Source of the DNA: Selaginella moellendorffii
Taxonomy: Eukaryota; Plantae; Lycopodiophyta
Length of the DNA: 64,000 nt
Assembly: GCF_000143415.4 (NCBI RefSeq)
Contig: NW_003314304.1
Span: 1,112,047-1,176,046, forward strand
Direction of reading: 5' to 3'
Under the pieces are notes generated by a model. It searched no databases and was not told the DNA's origin. It saw only the letters and a list, made by a program, of their open reading frames with translations. The translations under genes and the position numbers were made by a program. Of this stretch, positions 48,157 to 61,825 are shown piece after piece (the first letter of the stretch is position 1; each line of letters begins with the position of its first letter).

Positions 48157-48903
48157 CTACGACGAGGTGGTAAATCGCTTGAGGTACTCTGGATCCTTCT
48201 TTGCCTTGTCTTGAAACTTCTTGAACCATTTCTCCAGGATGTCGAGCGGGACAACCATCCTCCCATTCTCCTGGCTGCAAAACGACTGCATGAAGTTGAA
48301 GAGATTCTCGCCAACCTTGAGCGCCAGATCCTCCACCTTCTTGTAGTTGCCAACGTTGAGAGCCGGGAGCGAGACGAGGTCCTCCACCGCGAGGCCGATC
48401 TTGGCAGTGAGTGGCTGCGTCTCGGAGGCCATGATTTGCATCTGGCCGCCGGGCTTTGGCCACAGCAGCGTCACCACTGCCGAGGGACAAGCCTTGTGGA
48501 CGGCTCCACAGTACTGGAACTGCGATCCCGGGGACTGGACGTAAACCGCCAGAGCTTTCTCCGGAGGGAGCGAGAGCTCGTTGAGAAGGAAGATACACAT
48601 TTCTTTCACTTCCTCGTACCCTTCTCCTGTGTAACCAAGAGGAAAAAACTTTAGAGAGAGCTCTCTTCGAAAAAACTAAAGACCAAGCAAGAAATGATAG
48701 CCTCTCGGGAAGAAGAGAGAAGAAAGAATGAGCTCTCTTCTCTCGTTCTTCGCAATTTCAAGCAACGAAGCAAAGGATTTCTTCGCAAACTCAGACTTAC
48801 CCAGGAAAACGCTCATGTCGAGCACCCAGTGCGCAATGTCGATCTGTTGGAAGCTCGCGGCGTCCATCGGGAAGCTGCGATTCGGGAAAACCACCCCAAA
48901 CAT
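48157..48903 (-). CDS. OPI10/Hikeshi-family protein (DUF775); exons 48903-48801 and 48626-48157
   Basis: MFGVVFPNRSFP, CIFLLN..LPP.KALAVY, AKIGLAVE, LALKVGENLFNFMQSF, ILEKWFKKFQ. Confidence 0.92.
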
Positions 48904-49156: not shown

Positions 49157-50636
49157 CTAGCTCTTAGCGATACATCTGCGAAGCCTGGATCCAAACAGCG
49201 CTCCGGCGCAGCGTTGCACGTATCCAGCAAGATCTCTAGTCGGTCTTCGCGGCGGATAGAATGCGCTCTTCCTGTAAGGCGGATCATCTGCTCTGGATTG
49301 CCGCTGGAGAAACTGGTGGAAAGTACTCCCGTTCCGGAGCGAATCGTTCTTCGACTGGATCACCGCGGTCATGTCCAGATTGCCCGAGTTCGCTCCAGCG
49401 AACCAGGGCGTCACCTCCTTCTTGGATCCCGCCACGAAGACGTTGAACTCGCTCAAGATGGTGGCGGTCACTCGAGCTCCCAGCGCGTAGTATCCCCAGT
49501 TGGAGTAGAGATTGTTGACGACGTGACAGTAGCCGAATCGGCAGTGCGGCATCCTCTGCGTGGAATCGCGGAACCAGTTGCGAAAGACGGTCACTCGCAT
49601 CACGCTGTCCTGGCGATCGCTGTCCGAGGCGCCGAGGAGCATGTTGAAATCGCGGTTGGAGAGGTAGCAGTTCGAGATGGTCACGTCGGTGGATCCCTGG
49701 ACGACCGAGACGAGGCCCTCCGATCCGGAGAAGCTCGTAAGGTGGTCGATCCAGATGCGCTTGGATCCCGCGAAGACGTGCACGGTGTCGGTCTCTGGAA
49801 CGCTGTTGATCTGGAAGTTGTGGAGGATGACGTTGGTGACGCCGGCGAGGACGATGGAGCGGCCGGTGATGGTGATGTTGCTGCCGCGGCCATCGATGGT
49901 GGTATCGCTCCGGATCCACAGCATCTCGCGGAGCTGGATGATCATGGTCTTGGAGAAAGTTATCCACACTCCACCGGACTTGGGATTCAAGCTCACTCCG
50001 TAGCGCAGGCTTCCCTTTTGTGGATCCGTGGGATTGTCGTCGGGCCGGGTGACGACGTAGGATCTTCCATTGGCACCGCCGGTGAGACCGCCAGCGAAGC
50101 CGTAAGCGCAGGATGGGAGCGCGCGGCCGGAGCCACATTGGAACTGGCAAGTGGTTCCATCGCTGTTACACCTGGCTGCTCGAAAGGAAACAATGGAACT
50201 TAGTTCGAAGATTTGTGAAAAGTTCTGTGGATGGATGCTTACTTGGTGATGCTGCTGCCTGGAGGAGCGCTCGGCTCGGACGTCTGTTCTCTTCCTCCAA
50301 AGTTCTACCTCGGGTTACCTGGTGAGACAAAGAAGAAAAGATGAAGAAATCGTTGTATAACTGTGGAAGAAGAACGTATGATCTTATACCTGAGCGCATG
50401 AAGCTCCATCGCTCGTGCATTTTCCTGCTAGCAAAGATCGTTTGAGATGCTTAAACTTCTGTCAATGCTTACTAGACGAGTGCAGCTGGAGAGATCCGCT
50501 CGGTTCCTCCAAGGTTCTTACCTGGAAGAACATCAAAAAGCTTTTACCGCGATGGAGAATCATCTCATCTTACCTTGGAGCAAACTCCAGCATTTGCATG
50601 GATCAAAGCCACGAGAAGTAGCAACAGTAGCCCCAT
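49157..50636 (-). CDS. Secreted pectate lyase-like protein (PL1), 5 exons
   Basis: Reconstructed with matching phases: signal peptide MGLLLLLLVALIHANAG (50636-50574), three short exons, then GFAGGLTGG..GSLRYG..TIDGRG..WIDH..STDVTISN..QRMPHCR..HVVNN. Confidence 0.9.
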
Positions 50637-51292
50637 CCAAAGAGAGCTCTAAGTTCCTTTCTGCTACTCCAAAACCATTCCCAGGCGATGGAACTGGTGA
50701 AAGAAGAGCTACAAGTAGTGGAAGACGAAGAAGAAGAAGAAGAAGAGTATTCTTCTTCACACCTTCCGGGAAAAGAATTCGCTCGAAGTGCATCAATCCA
50801 CGCCAGTGCCAGGCCGCGCAAGCCGATTCCAAGCAATGGAAAAATCGCCACAAAGTGGAGGTGATATTCCCGCGAGGCCTTCTTTGCGTGCACGCCCGCC
50901 ATGGCCACCGATCCAACGGACTTGCCCCGGGATCGCCAATTGTTTAATCGCGAACGCGAGCGATCGTGAGCGCCAGAATGTGCGTCGTTTGACAATGCTG
51001 CTCCATCCAGACCTTCTCGCTCGCGAAAGCTTCCTCGCTCCATTGACTTGTCGCTGCGCCAAGCTTCCAGCGCAATCTTCGTGATCGCCAAAGGAGAAGG
51101 AAGGAATTCTAAACAAATGCCTCAAAGCTAACGTTAGAACCCTAGCAAATATTTTAGGGTTCTTGGCAATTTGGAGGGAGGCCGCCTCGTCTAGCGGCAA
51201 GTAAGCGAGATTCTTGTGCTGGGATTTAGGTAGAATGCGAGGCACAGGCCACAGATTTACTCCGAGCTTCATCGAATCGGAAAAGTTTTGGA

Positions 51293-52666
51293 TCATTTCT
51301 CCAGCTTGGGAGCTTCTGCCACAACAAGATCGACGAAATTATGCCCAGGATCGTCGAAATCTTGCTTGCTGGGGACGAGGTCGATCGCAGGACGGTCGAA
51401 ATCTTGCTCGCCCGTGACGACGGCGGCAGCATTGATCTCCATCGCTGCGGTCTCTGCATGGCCACTGGGGACGGGGCCGCAGCGATGATCCAGCCAGAGA
51501 ATGGCGATCCCAGAGGCGAAATACGTCGCCTGTGCCAATCCCAGGCGAGCGAAGAACATCGCGCTGGCAAGCTGTGGCCGGGCCGCTGGAAAAGAAGGGT
51601 CCAGGACGCTACTTCCGGCGCCAGTCTGATGATTCCCATGAACAGGAGCTTGATCCGGTAGCGTCGAGTGCCAAGCTCCTTGTGTTCGTGGGCATCGTGG
51701 GCCAGGACGTAGAGTGGCGAAGCAAAGGAGCTCATGAAGGCCGCGATCACTGCCCGGGTGGATTGTTTGAGGTTTATCTTGGGTCCCCGTGTGAGAACTA
51801 GCCAGAAGAGGAGCCACTGGAGGATGGTGGAGAGAAGGACGAGCACGAAGGGAAAGTATGAGGCTCCCGTGATCGTGAAGACCGAGCAAGAGATGGCACT
51901 CAGCAGGATGGCTGATCCAATATGAAGGCCTGCAAGGAAGAAAACAGTGAATCCGGCTTGAAAAAGCTTGTCTCTCTTCGACCTGCGAGGATTGCTACGC
52001 CAGCTTTCTTCTTCCACGAGGTTGCGTTGTTTGTTTTGGACGTCACCGCAATGCTTCCATTCAGAGCTCCGGAGACCAGCGTGGCTATGATCCCGAGGAT
52101 GAGAACTGGTGAGATGGAGGAGTTACCGGGTGAAGAGAGCCTCTTTTTGTAGATGGCATCATACTCGATCGCGAGTGCCTGGCTGGACTTGACGGTCAGC
52201 ATAACGATGCTGAAGAGCGTGCTCTTGGTGCTCATCTCTCGCCTGGCAACCAGGAAGGATCTTCATCAGGGTAGTGAAGGTACGAATCTTCTATTTTTTT
52301 CGTCTCGATGAATCTATTGTTGAATTGAAGAAGAAAGAACTCTTACCGGTCGATGGACGCTTTTGGATGTCGAGCCAAGTTCCATAGCTGTATGAGCGGG
52401 AAGAAGAGCGCAGATTGGATTGGCTGCTGCTCGACAGGTATGTTCAACTTGAAAACCACGACACTGATTATCTGAGATCCGATCGAAGCGACGAGCAGGA
52501 AGTAGAAATTCCACCTCAGCAACTGATCAGGAAACTTGTAGTATTGAACAAGAGTGATGACAGTGAGGATACCATCAGCCAAGTAAGAGCCAGCAGAGAA
52601 GATCACTCGCACGGGCTCGATCGCAGCAACGAGCGCTTTGGCAGAAGGCATTCCCGAGACAGCCAT
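51293..52666 (-). pseudogene. Multipass membrane protein, XK-related-like, copy 1 (1-bp frameshift near 51575)
   Basis: 3 exons, collinear with 54424-55859. ggccgggcc here versus ggccggggcc in copy 2 shifts the last helix and tail out of frame. Confidence 0.65.
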
Positions 52667-52964
52667 CAAAGTCTTGGTGTAAGTCTTGTATACTTCTATA
52701 ATGTGTGCACTCGTCAAAGGTGTGCGCCGGATTGACATCATATGGTGGTCGTCACATCAGAGTGTAAGTCGTCTCACATCGCGGTACTGTCGCTTTTACT
52801 TTGATTTCATTGCTTCTTGTGATGTTGGAATTTGACTCCGTGCGGTCCTTAAATTTGATTCCTGTGCATTCCAACATTCGGATATATTGGAAGAAGTCAC
52901 GGCTTCCCTACCACCAAAACCACGAAGGTATTATCAAGCGTTTGGATGTTCTCTCAGTGCTGCG

Positions 52965-53787
52965 TCACCACTGCCGAGGGACAAGCCTTGTGGACGGCTC
53001 CACAGTACTGGAACTGCGATCCCGGGGACTGGACGTAAACCGCGAGATGGTGGTGTCGCTCCGGATCCACAGCATCTCGCGGAGCTGGATGATCATGGTC
53101 TTGGAGAAAGTTATCCACACTCCACCGGACTTTGGATTCAAGCTCACTCCGTAGCGCAGGCTTCTCTTTTGTGGATCCGTGGGATTGTCGTCGGGCCGGG
53201 TGACGACGTAGGATCTTCCATTGGCACCGCCTGTGAGACCGCCAGCGAAGCCGTAAGCGCAGGATGGGAGCGCGCGGCCGGAGCCGCATTGGAACTGGCA
53301 AGTGGTTCCATCGCTGTTACACCGGGCTGCTCGAAAGGAAACAATGGAACTTAGTTCGAAGATTTGTGAAAAGTTCTGTGGATGGATGCTTACTTGGTGA
53401 TGCTGCTGCCTGGAGGAGCGCTCGGCTCGGACGTCTGTTCTCTTCCTCCAAAGTTCTACCTCGGGTTACCTGGCGAGACAAAGAAGAAAAGATGAAGAAA
53501 TCGTGGTATAACTTTGGAAGAAGAACGTATGATCTTATACCTGAGCGCATGAAGCTCCATCGCTCGTGCATTTTCCTGCTAGCAAAGATCGTTTGAGATG
53601 CTTAAACTTCTGTCAATGCTTACTAGACGAGTGCAGCTGGAGAGATCCGCTCGGTTCCTCCAAGGTTCTTACCTGGAAGAACATCAAAAAGCTTTTACCG
53701 CGATGGAGAATCATCTCATCTTACCTTGGAGCAAACTCCAGCATTTGCATGGATCAAAGCCACGAGAAGTAGCAACAGTAGCCCCAT
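52965..53787 (-). pseudogene. Truncated pectate lyase-like copy fused out of frame to an OPI10 fragment
   Basis: Signal peptide and short exons retained. Frame leaves homology after RSDTTI and stops at 52965. Confidence 0.88.
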
Positions 53788-54423
53788 CCAAAGAGAGCTC
53801 TAAGTTCCTTTCTGCTACTCCAAAACCATTCCCAGGCGATGGAACTGGTGAAAGAAGAGCTACAAGTAGTGGAAGACGAAGAAGAAGAAGAGTATTCTTC
53901 TTCACAACTTCCGGGAAAAGAATTCGCTCGAAGTGCATCAATCCACGCCAGTGCCAGGCCGCGCAAGCCGATTCCAAGCAATGGAAAAATCGCCACAAAG
54001 TGGAGGTGATATTCCCGCGAGGCCTTCTTTGCGTGCACGCCCGCCATGGCCACCGATCCAACGGACTTGCCCCCGGATCGCCAATTTTTTAATCGCGAAC
54101 GCGAGCGATCGTGAGCGCCAGAATGCGCGTCGTTTGACAATGCTGCTCCATCCAGACCTTCTCGCTCGCGAAAGCTTCCTCGCTCCATTGACTTGTCGCT
54201 GCGCCAAGCTTCCAGCGCAATCTTCGTGATCGCCAAAGGAGAAGGAAGGAATTCTAAACAAATGCCTCAAAGCTAACGTTAGAACCCTAGCAAATATTTT
54301 AGGGTTCTTGGGAGTTTGGAGAGATCGCCTCGTCTAGCGGCAAGTAAGCGAGATTCTTGTGCTGGGATTGAGGCACAGGCCGCAGATATACTCCGAGCTT
54401 CCTCGAATCGGAGATGTTTTGGA

Positions 54424-55859
54424 TCATTTCTCCAGCTTGGGAGCTTCTGCCACAACAAGATCGACGAAATTCTGCCCAGGATCGCCGAAATCTTGCTTGC
54501 TGGGGACGAGGTCGATCGCAGGACGGTCGAAATCTTGCTTGCTGGGGACGAGGTCGATCGCAGGACGGTCGAAATCTTGCTCGCCCGGGACGACGCCGGC
54601 AGCATTGATCTCCATCGCTGCGGTCTCTGCATGGCCACTGGGGACGGGGCCGCAGCGATGATCCAGCCAGGGAATGGCGATCCCAGAGGCGAAATACGTC
54701 GCCTGTGCCAATCCCAGGCGAGCGAAGAACATCGCGTTGGCAATCTGTGGCCGGGGCCTCTGGAAAAGAAGGATCCAGGACGCTACTTCCGGTGCCAGTT
54801 TGACGATTCCCATGAACAGGAGCTTGATCCGGTAGCGTCGAGTGCCAAGCTCCTTGTGTTCGTGGGCATCGTGGGCCAGGACGTAGAGTGGCGAAGCACA
54901 GGAGCTCATGAAGGCCGCGATCACTGCCCGGGTGTATTGTTTGAGGTTTATCTTGGGTCCCCGTGTGAGAACTAGCCAGAAGAGGAGCCACTGGAGGATG
55001 CCGCTGGTGGAGAGAAGGACGATCACGAAGGGAAAGTATGAGACTCCCGTGATCACGAAGACCGAGCAAGAGATGGCATTCAGCAGGATGGCTGATCCAA
55101 TATGAAGGCCTGCAAGGAAGAAAACAGTGAATCCGGCTTGAAACAAAGAGAGAAAAAGCTTGTCTCTCTTCGACCTGCGAGGATTGCTACGCCAGCTTTC
55201 TTCTTCCACGAGTTTGCGTTGGTTGTTTTGGACGCCACCGCAATGCTTCCATTCAGAGCTCCGGAGACCAGTGTGGCTATGATCCCGAGGATGAGAACAG
55301 GTGAGATGGAGGAGTTACCGGGTGAAGAGAGCCTCTTTTTGTAGATGGCATCATACTCGATCGCGAGTGCCTGGCTGGACTTGACGGTCAGCATAACGAT
55401 GCTGAAGAGCGTGCTCTTGGTGCTCATCTCTCGTCTGGCAACCAGGAAGGATCTTCATCAGGGTAGTGAAGGTACGTATCTTCTATTTTTTTTCTTCTCG
55501 ATGAATCTATTGTTGAATTGAAGAAGAAAGAACTCTTACCGGTCGATGGACGCTTTTGGATGTCGAGCCAAGTTCCATAGCTGTATGAGCGGGAAGAAGA
55601 GCGCAGATTGGATTGGCTGCTGCTCGACAGGTATTTTCAACTTGAAAACCACGACACTGACTATCTGAGATCCGATCAAAACGACGAGCAGGTTGTAGAA
55701 ATTCCGCCTCAGCAACTGATCAGGAAACTTATAGTATTGAACAAGAGTGATGACAGTGAGGATACCATCAGCCAAGTAAGAGCCAGCAGAGAAGATCACT
55801 CGCACGGGCTCGCTCGCAGCAACGAGCGCTTTGGCAGAAGGCATTCCCGAAACAGCCAT
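54424..55859 (-). CDS. Multipass membrane protein, XK-related-like, copy 2 (apparently intact, 3 exons)
   Basis: Splices atcgaccg|gtaag...gaag|atcc and ctcgcag|gtcg...ttgcag|gcc give one open frame with 8-10 hydrophobic segments and an acidic repeat tail. Family call is by eye. Confidence 0.65.
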
Positions 55860-56269
55860 CAAAGTCTTGGTGTAAGTCTTTTATGCTCCTTCGTAAAATA
55901 TTTCTATAATGTGTGCACTCGTCAAAGGTGTGCGCCGGATTGGCATGGTCGTCACATCAGAGTACTTACAAAGGCACGTATAAGTCGTCTCACGTCGCGG
56001 TACTGTCGCTTTTACTTTTCTTGTGATGTTGGAATTTGACTCCGTGCGGTCCTTAAATTTGATTCGTGTGCATTCTAACATTCAGAAGTCAAGACTTCCC
56101 TACCACTAAAACCACGAAGGTACTATCAAGCGTTTGGATGTTCTCTCAGTGCTGAGTTTTCATATTGCAGCTATGGATGCAGGTTGCAGTAAGGATGTGA
56201 AGCTTGGCTCTGGGATCGGTGGCAAGCAGCTGTCTGCTCCAACTGGAAACAAGGCTCATGTAGCAACTT

Positions 56270-61609: not shown

Positions 61610-61825
61610 TCTGTATATGCAGCTACGATGAGCGTACGATTGTTCCGCTCCATTACAAGCAGCATTGGATTGCTCTTCCAGGAAGGAGCAAGAAAACAAC
61701 GAGGAGGCTGGCGGCTGTCTGTATATGCAGCTACGATGAGCGTACGATTGTTCCGCTCCATTACAAGCAGCATTGGATTGCTCTTCCAGGAAGGAGCAAG
61801 AAAACAACGAGGGGGCTGGCGGCTG
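61610..61825. repeat. Near-perfect 108-bp tandem duplication
   Basis: ctgtatatgcagctacg... starts at 61611 and again at 61719. Confidence 0.95.

What the first reader, a model, noticed from the sequence alone, without database searches (positions are those of the whole stretch)
51293..55859. Duplicated multipass membrane gene resembling XK-related (Xkr/CED-8) lipid scramblases
Seen: splicing gives a protein with 8-10 hydrophobic segments. Landmarks in order are SYLADGILTVITLVQYY, a TVKSSQAL helix, IIATLVS, LQWLLFW, ELGTRRYRI followed by a helix containing E, a last helix YFASGIA..LDH..P, then an acidic tail. Known: animal Xkr proteins show D..TD...YY, ESAPQL, SL.S, HW...FW, EGRTRYR...EN and G...M..YY...HP in the same order, and Xkr4/8/9 are activated by cleavage of the C-terminal tail. 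Inference: a divergent Xkr-like scramblase in a seed-free plant; I do not know of a characterised land-plant member. Caveat: the hallmark ESAPQ motif is not conserved.
Basis: partly seen in the sequence, partly recalled or inferred. Interest (0 to 1): 0.8.

Follow-up and report, generated by a model that had tools for sequence, protein, structure and literature searches.

The report
Divergent XK-fold membrane gene in Selaginella
A tandemly duplicated Selaginella gene encodes a membrane protein with the fold of animal XK/Xkr lipid scramblases. It is the most degenerate member of a small, unstudied family found in liverworts, lycophytes and ferns, and it has lost the family's hallmark residues.

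Summary
On the minus strand of this Selaginella moellendorffii window, a 3.1 kb tandem duplication carries two copies of a three-exon gene. Copy 2 (54424-55859) is intact at 427 aa. Copy 1 (51293-52666) has a derived 1-nt frameshift.

The Xkr reading is supported at fold level. A template-free AlphaFold model matches human XKR8, human XKR4 and rat XKR9 with Z 26.2, 24.5 and 23.3 over about 305 residues. The next hit has Z 12.

Sequence searches find relatives only in Marchantia, Adiantum, one second Selaginella gene and unnamed transcript contigs. Those relatives keep an E-T-G-P-Q-L motif, the XK hallmark. They share both intron positions and phases with the window gene.

The window protein is the outlier of this clade:
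- It keeps 24 of 50 conserved positions.
- Its hallmark reads K-S-S-Q-A-L.
- It sits on a very long branch.
- It gives no Pfam hit.

RNA contigs from four studies show only plus-strand (antisense) splicing across the gene. No sense-spliced form was seen.

Scramblase activity is therefore unproven and doubtful for this copy. I found no paper on plant XK-like proteins. UniProt already auto-names one fern relative 'XK-related protein'.

The parts
55540..55859 (-). Copy 2, exon 1: ATG at 55859, encoding TM1, TM2 and the first half-inserted helix
   Evidence: Splice model. Annotated as SELMODRAFT_419698 (P0001), where the annotators start at Met6.
55453..55539 (-). Copy 2, intron 1 (phase 2, GT..AG, 87 nt). 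The annotated models use an alternative acceptor that makes the intron 55435-55539 and drops 6 aa.
   Evidence: The same phase, at alignment column 170-172, is found in the Selaginella paralogue and the Marchantia homologue. It was not seen spliced in RNA contigs.
55175..55452 (-). Copy 2, exon 2: TM3 with the degenerate hallmark K-S-S-Q-A-L, and TM4
55110..55174 (-). Copy 2, intron 2 (phase 1, 65 nt), lying inside the codon of the clade-invariant Gly189
   Evidence: Splicing rebuilds the conserved A-G-L-H motif. The position and phase are identical in P0024 (L004) and P0009 (L003). RNA contigs run through it unspliced.
54424..55109 (-). Copy 2, exon 3: TM5 to TM8, the second half-inserted helix, and a disordered acidic tail; stop codon at 54424-54426
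   Evidence: pLDDT below 50 for residues 344-416.
54477..54593 (-). 42-nt tandem repeat encoding the 14-aa tail unit DFDRPAIDLVPSKQ. Copy number varies between copies and among RNA contigs.
   Evidence: The 42-nt skip is this repeat, not an intron.
51293..52666 (-). Copy 1: same three-exon layout (exons 52666-52347, 52260-51983, 51929-51293). It has a derived 1-nt deletion at about 51583, a 6-nt deletion and one tail repeat fewer. It is a probable pseudogene.
   Evidence: The annotated model P0003 hides the frameshift inside an invented intron.
49895..52962 (.). Duplication unit A: 5' part of a pectate lyase gene, copy 1, and its upstream region
   Evidence: blastn; repeats.
53046..56154 (.). 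Duplication unit B: partial pectate lyase copy, copy 2, and its upstream region. It is preceded by an 89-bp filler (52959-53047) copied from 48465-48553.
55080..56154 (+). Spliced plus-strand RNA antisense to copy 2. Its GT..AG introns are 55472-55523, 55631-55691, 55872-55927 and 56000-56085. It continues into the MYND/DUF4470 gene.
   Evidence: Joints and loose ends in contigs of four runs. I checked the splice dinucleotides on the plus strand. It has no long ORF and no selection signal in plus frames.

Best explanation
The locus encodes an XK-fold multipass membrane protein: eight transmembrane helices plus two half-inserted helices in two repeats, followed by a disordered acidic C-terminal tail. 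It is a fast-evolving, lineage-specific paralogue within a small land-plant XK-like family seen in Marchantia, Selaginella and Adiantum. That family is itself a remote relative of animal XK/Xkr/CED-8 proteins. Copy 2 is structurally intact and may still be under purifying selection. Copy 1 is a recent pseudogene. The canonical plant members keep the TM1 Asp and the TM3 E-x-x-P-Q-L kink, so I infer that they handle phospholipid head groups as Xkr8 does. The window protein has replaced these residues (E to K, P to Q, Q to A, and a nearby Q to E). It is therefore most likely an altered or inactive scramblase-type protein rather than a standard Xkr8-like scramblase. Shown here: the gene structure, the duplication, the family membership, the fold, the residue losses and the antisense RNA. 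Inferred: any lipid-scrambling role, tail regulation, and sense expression.
For: Fold. The AlphaFold2 model was built without templates from plant sequences only (pLDDT 70.5, pTM 0.71). Foldseek's best hits are the Xkr structures (ranks 1-4 and 6): 9boj, 8xej, 7dce, 7p14 and 7p16, with probability 1.00 and TM by target 0.54-0.66. All other hits have TM 0.26 or less. The exhaustive aligner gives XKR8 Z 26.2 (rmsd 3.2 A over 309 aa), XKR4 Z 24.5 and XKR9 Z 23.3; the next chain has Z 12.0 over 132 aa. The top ESM Atlas shape hit is a PF09815 cluster. The canonical Selaginella paralogue gives Z 26.0, 24.3 and 22.7.

Family. phmmer against 1.84 billion representatives finds 11 relatives with E from 8e-13 to 6.5e-4. 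The named ones come from Adiantum, Marchantia and Selaginella, and one is named 'XK-related protein' by UniRef. They carry A-L-E-T-G-P-Q-L. Three of the 19 aligned sequences give PF09815 as their best Pfam hit, with a best E-value of 0.015. Features of P0001 and P0012 put PF09815 clusters first, at 0.91-0.92 for 50 of 60 hits. Both introns share phase and position with the Selaginella paralogue and the Marchantia gene.

Divergence. The window protein keeps 24 of 50 conserved positions, against 36-48 in the other full-length members. Its stem branch is 2.71 substitutions per site, against a median tip of 0.92.

Selection. The copy 2 branch has 6 synonymous and 2 nonsynonymous changes (p=0.004 against neutrality). 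Copy 1 has 1 synonymous, 26 nonsynonymous and a frameshift.
Against: No Pfam, NCBIfam or PDB sequence hit was found for the window protein, even at E 10. A profile of the plant family does not reach Xkr chains in the PDB. The link to animal XK therefore rests on fold, one motif, sub-threshold profile hits and language-model features. I could not run a profile-profile comparison. Both structure models draw on nearly the same shallow alignment of 18-19 rows. No sense-spliced transcript was seen; in four runs all canonical splice joints lie on the opposite strand and intron 2 is read through. The selection signal on copy 2 rests on 8 substitutions, and summed over all branches the changes look neutral (13 synonymous, 38 nonsynonymous).
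Confidence: 0.8

Rival explanations
1. Copy 2 is a working Xkr8/Xkr9-type phospholipid scramblase. It is kept off by its C-terminal tail and switched on when a protease removes the tail.
For: It has the same fold as XKR8, XKR4 and XKR9 over the whole core. It has a long disordered acidic tail ending in a hydrophobic stretch. XKR9 has a C-terminal peptide that plugs a hydrophobic pocket (PMC8298096). The TM1 Asp is retained. The copy 2 branch shows few amino-acid changes.
Against: The acidic residue before the PQL kink is Lys here, and the kink motif itself is gone. In Xkr8 the E141A mutant loses most scrambling (PMC8500837), and the PQL kink and the TM1/TM3 acidic cluster are family hallmarks (PMC8298096). 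From general knowledge, plants lack caspases. The tail is not conserved in the plant family and its repeat number varies. No sense mRNA was seen.
Confidence: 0.15
2. Both copies are decaying relics of an XK-like gene and make no functional protein. The open frame of copy 2 is a young leftover. The transcription over it belongs to an antisense 5' leader or non-coding RNA of the neighbouring MYND/DUF4470 gene.
For: Only plus-strand GT..AG joints were found in four independent runs, and intron 2 is unspliced. Five positions invariant in all 12 other clade members compared are lost, and the branch is very long. Copy 1 is frameshifted. Summed substitutions are about neutral, and exon divergence (2.2-3.1%) is similar to that of intron 1 (2.3%).
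Against: The 427-codon frame of copy 2 is intact, with both canonical splice sites. The other haplotype's allele is also intact. The copy 2 branch shows 6 synonymous against 2 nonsynonymous changes (p=0.004). The model still folds confidently into the XK fold. Contigs cannot show that a rare or tissue-specific sense mRNA is absent.
Confidence: 0.3
3. The protein belongs to an unrelated membrane family, and the likeness to XK is convergence of a helical bundle.
For: Sequence methods do not link it to animal Xkr above threshold. Helical bundles often give middling structural scores (note).
Against: Z of 23-26 over about 305 residues and the whole 10-helix topology is twice the best unrelated score. 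Relatives carry the family-specific E-x-x-P-Q-L motif at the matching helix. PF09815 is the most frequent Pfam hit across the aligned members (3 of 19) and has the best E-value. No other family competes.
Confidence: 0.03

Closest known systems
Human/mouse Xkr8 (PDB 7DCE, 8XEJ), a caspase- or kinase-activated plasma-membrane scramblase
   Same: It is the best structural match: Z 26.2, rmsd 3.2 A over 309 residues, covering model residues 7-345. There is an Asp on TM1, where Xkr8's essential D26 also lies (equivalence by motif, not by residue-level structure alignment). The core is followed by a cytosolic tail.
   Different: Identity in the structural alignment is 11%, and there is no profile hit. 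The residue matching the acidic position before P-Q-L is Lys, and the P-Q-L kink is absent. The second TM1 acidic position is Thr. No Basigin-type partner is known in plants. No caspase site can be argued.
Rat XKR9 (PDB 7P14, 7P16)
   Same: The architecture is the same: two repeats of four TM helices plus a half-inserted helix (PMC8298096). Z is 23.3 and TM by target is 0.63-0.66.
   Different: XKR9's 16-residue cleavable C-terminal peptide docks in a pocket. Here the tail is about 73 residues, acidic, repetitive and predicted disordered. The conserved hydrophilic TM3 motif is lost.
Human XK, partner of the bridge-like lipid transfer protein VPS13A, and C. elegans CED-8
   Same: They belong to the same superfamily. 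A role as a scramblase beside a bulk lipid-transfer protein would not need caspases, so it is the more plausible analogy for plants (inference only).
   Different: Nothing was tested here. I could not examine a VPS13-binding hairpin, and no plant partner is known.
Plant XK-like clade: Marchantia polymorpha Mp3g16190 (MARPO_0004s0052), Selaginella LOC9651110/SELMODRAFT_404210, Adiantum capillus-veneris A0A9D4Z7Y9 and others
   Same: Sequence similarity is significant, with E down to 8e-13. Both intron positions and phases match. The predicted fold is the same.
   Different: These members keep E-T-G-P-Q-L and 36-48 of 50 conserved positions. The window protein keeps 24 and sits on a stem branch about three times the median tip length.

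Membership tests
XK-related proteins (Pfam PF09815; XK, Xkr4/8/9, CED-8) | Match to the family profile above the curated cut-off | tested here: not met
   No PF09815 hit at E up to 10 was found for the exon pieces or for the full-length P0001, P0002 and P0003. Three of 19 aligned clade sequences hit it below threshold, with a best of 14.8 bits against a cut-off of 24.8.
XK-related proteins (Pfam PF09815; XK, Xkr4/8/9, CED-8) | XK fold: two repeats, each of four TM helices plus a half-inserted helix | tested here: met
   Z is 26.2, 24.5 and 23.3 to XKR8, XKR4 and XKR9 over 301-309 residues, and the next hit has Z 12.0. Foldseek's top hits are the Xkr entries. The order of helices is given.
XK-related proteins (Pfam PF09815; XK, Xkr4/8/9, CED-8) | Hydrophilic TM3 with an acidic residue and the conserved P-Q-L kink (the E-S-A-P-Q-L hallmark) | tested here: not met
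   The window protein reads K-S-S-Q-A-L where all 12 other clade members compared have Glu and 11 have Pro. The motif is described in PMC8298096.
XK-related proteins (Pfam PF09815; XK, Xkr4/8/9, CED-8) | Acidic pair on TM1 (D26 and D30 of Xkr8, essential for scrambling) | tested here: inconclusive
   The first Asp is kept (D26). The position four residues on is Thr, and Asn in plant relatives. The equivalence rests on motif spacing, not on a residue-level structural alignment (PMC8500837).
XK-related proteins (Pfam PF09815; XK, Xkr4/8/9, CED-8) | Regulatory C-terminal tail released by caspase or modified by a kinase | not testable with these tools
   A 73-residue acidic tail exists, with pLDDT below 50. 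It is not conserved in the clade.
XK-related proteins (Pfam PF09815; XK, Xkr4/8/9, CED-8) | Phospholipid scrambling activity | not testable with these tools
   This needs a cell or liposome assay.
Land-plant XK-like clade (Marchantia, Selaginella, Adiantum) | Significant sequence similarity to clade members | tested here: met
   phmmer gives E from 8.2e-13 to 6.5e-4 for 11 cluster representatives.
Land-plant XK-like clade (Marchantia, Selaginella, Adiantum) | Shared exon-intron structure | tested here: met
   Intron 2 lies in the invariant Gly codon, phase 1, in all three genes examined. Intron 1 is phase 2 within two alignment columns.
Land-plant XK-like clade (Marchantia, Selaginella, Adiantum) | Retention of clade-invariant residues | tested here: not met
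   24 of 50 conserved positions are kept. Five positions invariant in the other 12 members are changed: E120K, Q128E, S152G, S156T and G261S.

The most novel reading that the evidence does not exclude
Seed-free land plants keep an ancient XK-type lipid scramblase family that seed plants appear to have lost, perhaps working beside VPS13-like bulk lipid transporters. On this reading the Selaginella gene in this window is not decaying. It would be a neofunctionalised member with a charge-swapped TM3 (Glu to Lys, and Gln to Glu two turns on) and a repeat-bearing acidic tail. It would be held in check by antisense transcription from the neighbouring promoter.
Probability: 0.12. Interest if true: 0.75.

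Novelty: new variant of a known kind. Interest (0 to 1): 0.5.

Why it matters
Xkr proteins are known as animal apoptotic scramblases and as the XK partner of VPS13A. I found no paper describing a plant member in six full-text searches. The only trace is an automatic UniProt name on one fern protein.

This work shows that liverworts, a lycophyte and ferns carry proteins with the XK fold, the XK hallmark motif and a shared gene structure. That opens a testable question in Marchantia: what does an XK-type protein do in an organism without caspases?

The window gene itself is the least informative member. It has lost the hallmark, one copy is broken, and only antisense RNA is seen. It does offer a natural mutant of the TM3 motif for comparison with its canonical paralogue in the same genome.

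Tried and rejected
- **Family and sequence scans.** Pfam and NCBIfam scans of the three exon pieces and of the full-length proteins found nothing for the window protein. phmmer of P0001, P0005 and P0012, and hmmsearch of the family profile, against PDB sequences found no Xkr chain.
- **Word-index searches.** Searches with the family alignment and with P0012 were swamped by 8000 candidates and added only one Marchantia paleacea protein. The taxonomic range is therefore poorly sampled.
- **Profile-profile comparison.** I could not run hhalign against XK because no tool returned an XK-family sequence with a usable id, and I did not type sequences from memory.
- **ESM features on exon 3 alone.** This gave nothing useful.
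- **A plus-strand gene.** I considered that the plus-strand 219-aa ORF (54316-54975), or the plus-strand RNA, is the real gene. I rejected this: there is no Pfam hit, no excess of synonymous change in that frame (7 synonymous, 23 nonsynonymous), and no long ORF in the spliced plus-strand RNA.
- **An assembly artefact.** I considered that the duplication comes from collapsed haplotypes. I rejected this: the junction carries an 89-bp filler from another gene, and copy 1 differs from both copy 2 and the other haplotype.
- **The 42-nt skip.** The skip in two runs is repeat-number variation, not an intron.
Full report
**What is in the sequence.** The window is from Selaginella moellendorffii. Between 49895 and 56154 lies a tandem duplication. 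Unit A (49895-52962) and unit B (53046-56154) are 92-97% identical. They are joined by an 89-bp filler copied from the Hikeshi-like gene at 48465-48553. Each unit holds the 5' part of a pectate lyase gene and one copy of the gene in question, on the minus strand.

For copy 2 a three-exon model with canonical GT..AG introns gives an open 427-codon frame. The exons are 55859-55540, 55452-55175 and 55109-54424.

The public annotation (SELMODRAFT_419698, P0001, 416 aa) differs from my model only in starting at Met6 and using an acceptor 18 nt further on.

Copy 1 (52666-51293; SELMODRAFT_419696, P0003) has a 1-nt deletion in a run of C at about 51583. Neither copy 2 nor the other haplotype shares it, so it is derived. 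It shifts the frame before the last helix, and the annotators hid it in an invented intron.

The other haplotype scaffold (L001, GL377690.1) has the same neighbours but a single copy. That copy is closer to copy 2 (1.8% divergence) than copy 1 is to either of them (3.2-3.7%).

**Relatives.** Pfam, NCBIfam and PDB sequence searches find nothing for the protein. The word-index search finds only the three Selaginella models. An exhaustive phmmer of P0001 against 1.84 billion cluster representatives finds 11 relatives with E from 8e-13 to 6.5e-4. The named relatives come from these sources:
- the ferns Adiantum capillus-veneris and A. nelumboides;
- the liverworts Marchantia polymorpha (Mp3g16190 / MARPO_0004s0052) and M. 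paleacea;
- a second Selaginella gene (LOC9651110 / SELMODRAFT_404210).

The rest are unnamed transcript-sized contigs. UniRef names one fern protein 'XK-related protein'. No seed-plant protein appeared. Because the query is a divergent member, this is suggestive only.

In the alignment the relatives share a hydrophilic helix reading A-L-E-T-G-P-Q-L-x-L-Q, and a first helix with Y-L-x-D-F-x-S-N. The first of these is the XK hallmark. The XKR9 structure paper describes a highly conserved hydrophilic TM3 kinked at a P-Q-L motif, and a conserved acidic cluster on TM1 and TM3 (PMC8298096). Three of the 19 aligned sequences give PF09815 as their best Pfam hit, below threshold, with a best E of 0.015.

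**Gene structure as evidence of descent.** I solved the exact exon boundaries of the canonical Selaginella paralogue (L004) and the Marchantia gene (L003). Both have two introns with phases 2 and 1. Intron 2 lies inside the codon of the clade-invariant glycine (alignment column 293), exactly where intron 2 of the window gene lies. Intron 1 falls within two alignment columns of the window gene's intron 1, in the same phase. Splicing of intron 2 rebuilds the conserved A-G-L-H motif. The minus-strand gene model is therefore not an accident of open frames.

**Fold.** AlphaFold2 was run without templates on an alignment of 19 plant sequences. It gave a model with pLDDT 70.5 and pTM 0.71. Residues 1-343 form a helical core and the tail from 344 to 416 is disordered.

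Foldseek against the PDB puts the Xkr entries at ranks 1-4 and 6: XKR4 9boj, XKR8 8xej and 7dce, and XKR9 7p14 and 7p16. They have probability 1.00, TM by target 0.54-0.66 and 339-361 aligned columns. All other hits have TM of 0.26 or less.

The exhaustive aligner, run against 48,161 representative chains, gives the following:

| Chain | Z | rmsd / aligned residues |
|---|---|---|
| XKR8 | 26.2 | 3.2 A / 309 |
| XKR4 | 24.5 | 4.4 A / 301 |
| XKR9 | 23.3 | 3.5 A / 305 |
| next chain | 12.0 | 132 residues |

The best shape match in the ESM Atlas is a PF09815 cluster. Language-model features of both P0001 and the canonical paralogue put PF09815 clusters first. The canonical paralogue modelled in the same way gives Z 26.0, 24.3 and 22.7. 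From general knowledge, the AlphaFold2 weights predate the first Xkr structures (2021), so the agreement is not memorisation. The order of helices fits TM1, TM2, IH1, TM3, TM4, TM5, TM6, IH2, TM7, TM8 as described for XKR9 (PMC8298096).

**How far the window gene has drifted.** I took the 50 alignment positions conserved in at least 75% of 12 other clade members. The window protein keeps 24 of them, while the other full-length members keep 36-48. It has changed five positions that are invariant in the other 12: E120K, Q128E, S152G, S156T and G261S. It has also changed the kink proline (P123Q). In a maximum-likelihood tree its stem branch is 2.71 substitutions per site, against a median tip of 0.92.

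In Xkr8, alanine mutants of D26, D30, K134, E137, E141 and R183 lose most scrambling (PMC8500837). By motif position, the plant Glu before P-Q-L corresponds to E141, and it is Lys here. This equivalence is an inference from the motif, because I had no residue-level structural alignment.

**Selection.** I polarised substitutions with the three sequences: copy 2, copy 1 and the other haplotype.

| Branch | Synonymous | Nonsynonymous | Test against the neutral 3:1 expectation |
|---|---|---|---|
| copy 2 | 6 | 2 | p=0.004 |
| other haplotype | 6 | 10 | not significant |
| copy 1 | 1 | 26 | p=0.004 in the other direction |

Copy 1 also carries the frameshift. Summed over branches, the counts are about neutral. 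Exon divergence between the copies (2.2-3.1%) is no lower than in intron 1 (2.3%). The numbers are small. They fit a live copy 2 and a dead or rapidly changing copy 1, but they do not prove it.

**Expression.** Contigs of four probable RNA runs from four studies were laid on 54250-56000. All joints with canonical ends are GT..AG on the plus strand:
- 55472-55523 and 55631-55691, in all four runs;
- 55872-55927, in one run;
- a loose end that fits 56000-56085.

I checked the dinucleotides in the sequence. One 1302-nt contig continues into the plus-strand MYND/DUF4470 gene. These introns cut through exon 1 and intron 1 of the minus-strand gene, so this RNA cannot encode the protein. No contig shows either minus-strand intron removed, and contigs run straight through intron 2.

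The plus-strand RNA has no long ORF, and plus frames show no selection signal. Contigs drop rare forms, and the tissues are unknown to me. Sense expression is therefore unproven, not excluded.

**Most likely mechanism, and rivals.**
- Best reading (0.8 for identity): an XK-fold protein descended from a plant XK-like family, much altered in the polar TM1/TM3 core that Xkr8 needs for scrambling.
- I infer that the canonical plant members act on phospholipid head groups as Xkr proteins do.
- Copy 2 as a standard tail-gated scramblase: about 0.15.
- Both copies are relics under an antisense leader of the neighbouring gene: about 0.3.
- Convergence of an unrelated family: about 0.03.

**Novelty.** Six full-text searches found no paper on plant XK-like proteins or on any of the gene identifiers. 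The library is incomplete, and UniProt already auto-names one fern member. I rate this a new variant of a known kind. The fold and ancestry are XK, but the profile threshold and the hallmark motif are not met.

**Limits.**
- I made no profile-profile comparison with XK.
- The alignments behind both models are shallow and overlapping.
- Reads were available only as contigs, and only one read-laying run was allowed.
- The family's range is known only from a divergent query.

Noticed in passing
window 55080-56154 (+), continuing past 56154: A spliced plus-strand RNA with four short GT..AG introns runs antisense through copy 2 and appears continuous with the MYND/DUF4470 gene. It is either a long 5' leader or a natural antisense transcript.
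   Followed up: partly
window 52959-53047 and 48465-48553: The junction of the tandem duplication is filled by an 89-bp copy (97.8% identical) of an exon segment of the Hikeshi-like gene 4.4 kb away. This is a footprint of a complex rearrangement. Unit B also carries a truncated pectate lyase 5' part (53046 to about 53790).
   Followed up: partly
window 54477-54593; L001: The 42-nt unit encoding DFDRPAIDLVPSKQ is present in two full copies in copy 2 and in the other haplotype, and in one copy in copy 1. RNA contigs of two runs carry the shorter form.
   Followed up: partly
L001 8001-9436 (other haplotype) against window 55110-55174: The NCBI model LOC9644842 (P0002) reads through intron 2 as coding, because a 1-nt insertion inside the intron keeps the frame open. 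The three public models of this gene therefore disagree, and none matches the family alignment throughout.
   Followed up: yes
window 51293-52666 (copy 1): The copy 1 branch has 26 nonsynonymous changes against 1 synonymous, more than neutrality predicts (p=0.004). The cause is unknown. It could be a burst of adaptive change before the frameshift, or a mutational bias.
   Followed up: partly
window 61610-61825: There is a perfect tandem pair of a 108-nt unit (99% identical), just past the 3' end (61575) of the long PPR open reading frame on the plus strand.
   Followed up: no
L004 (GL377662.1) and the scaffold holding LOC9660796: The canonical Selaginella XK-like paralogue (481 aa, E-T-G-P-Q-L intact) lies next to a bZIP gene. 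It would be the better subject for functional work.
   Followed up: partly
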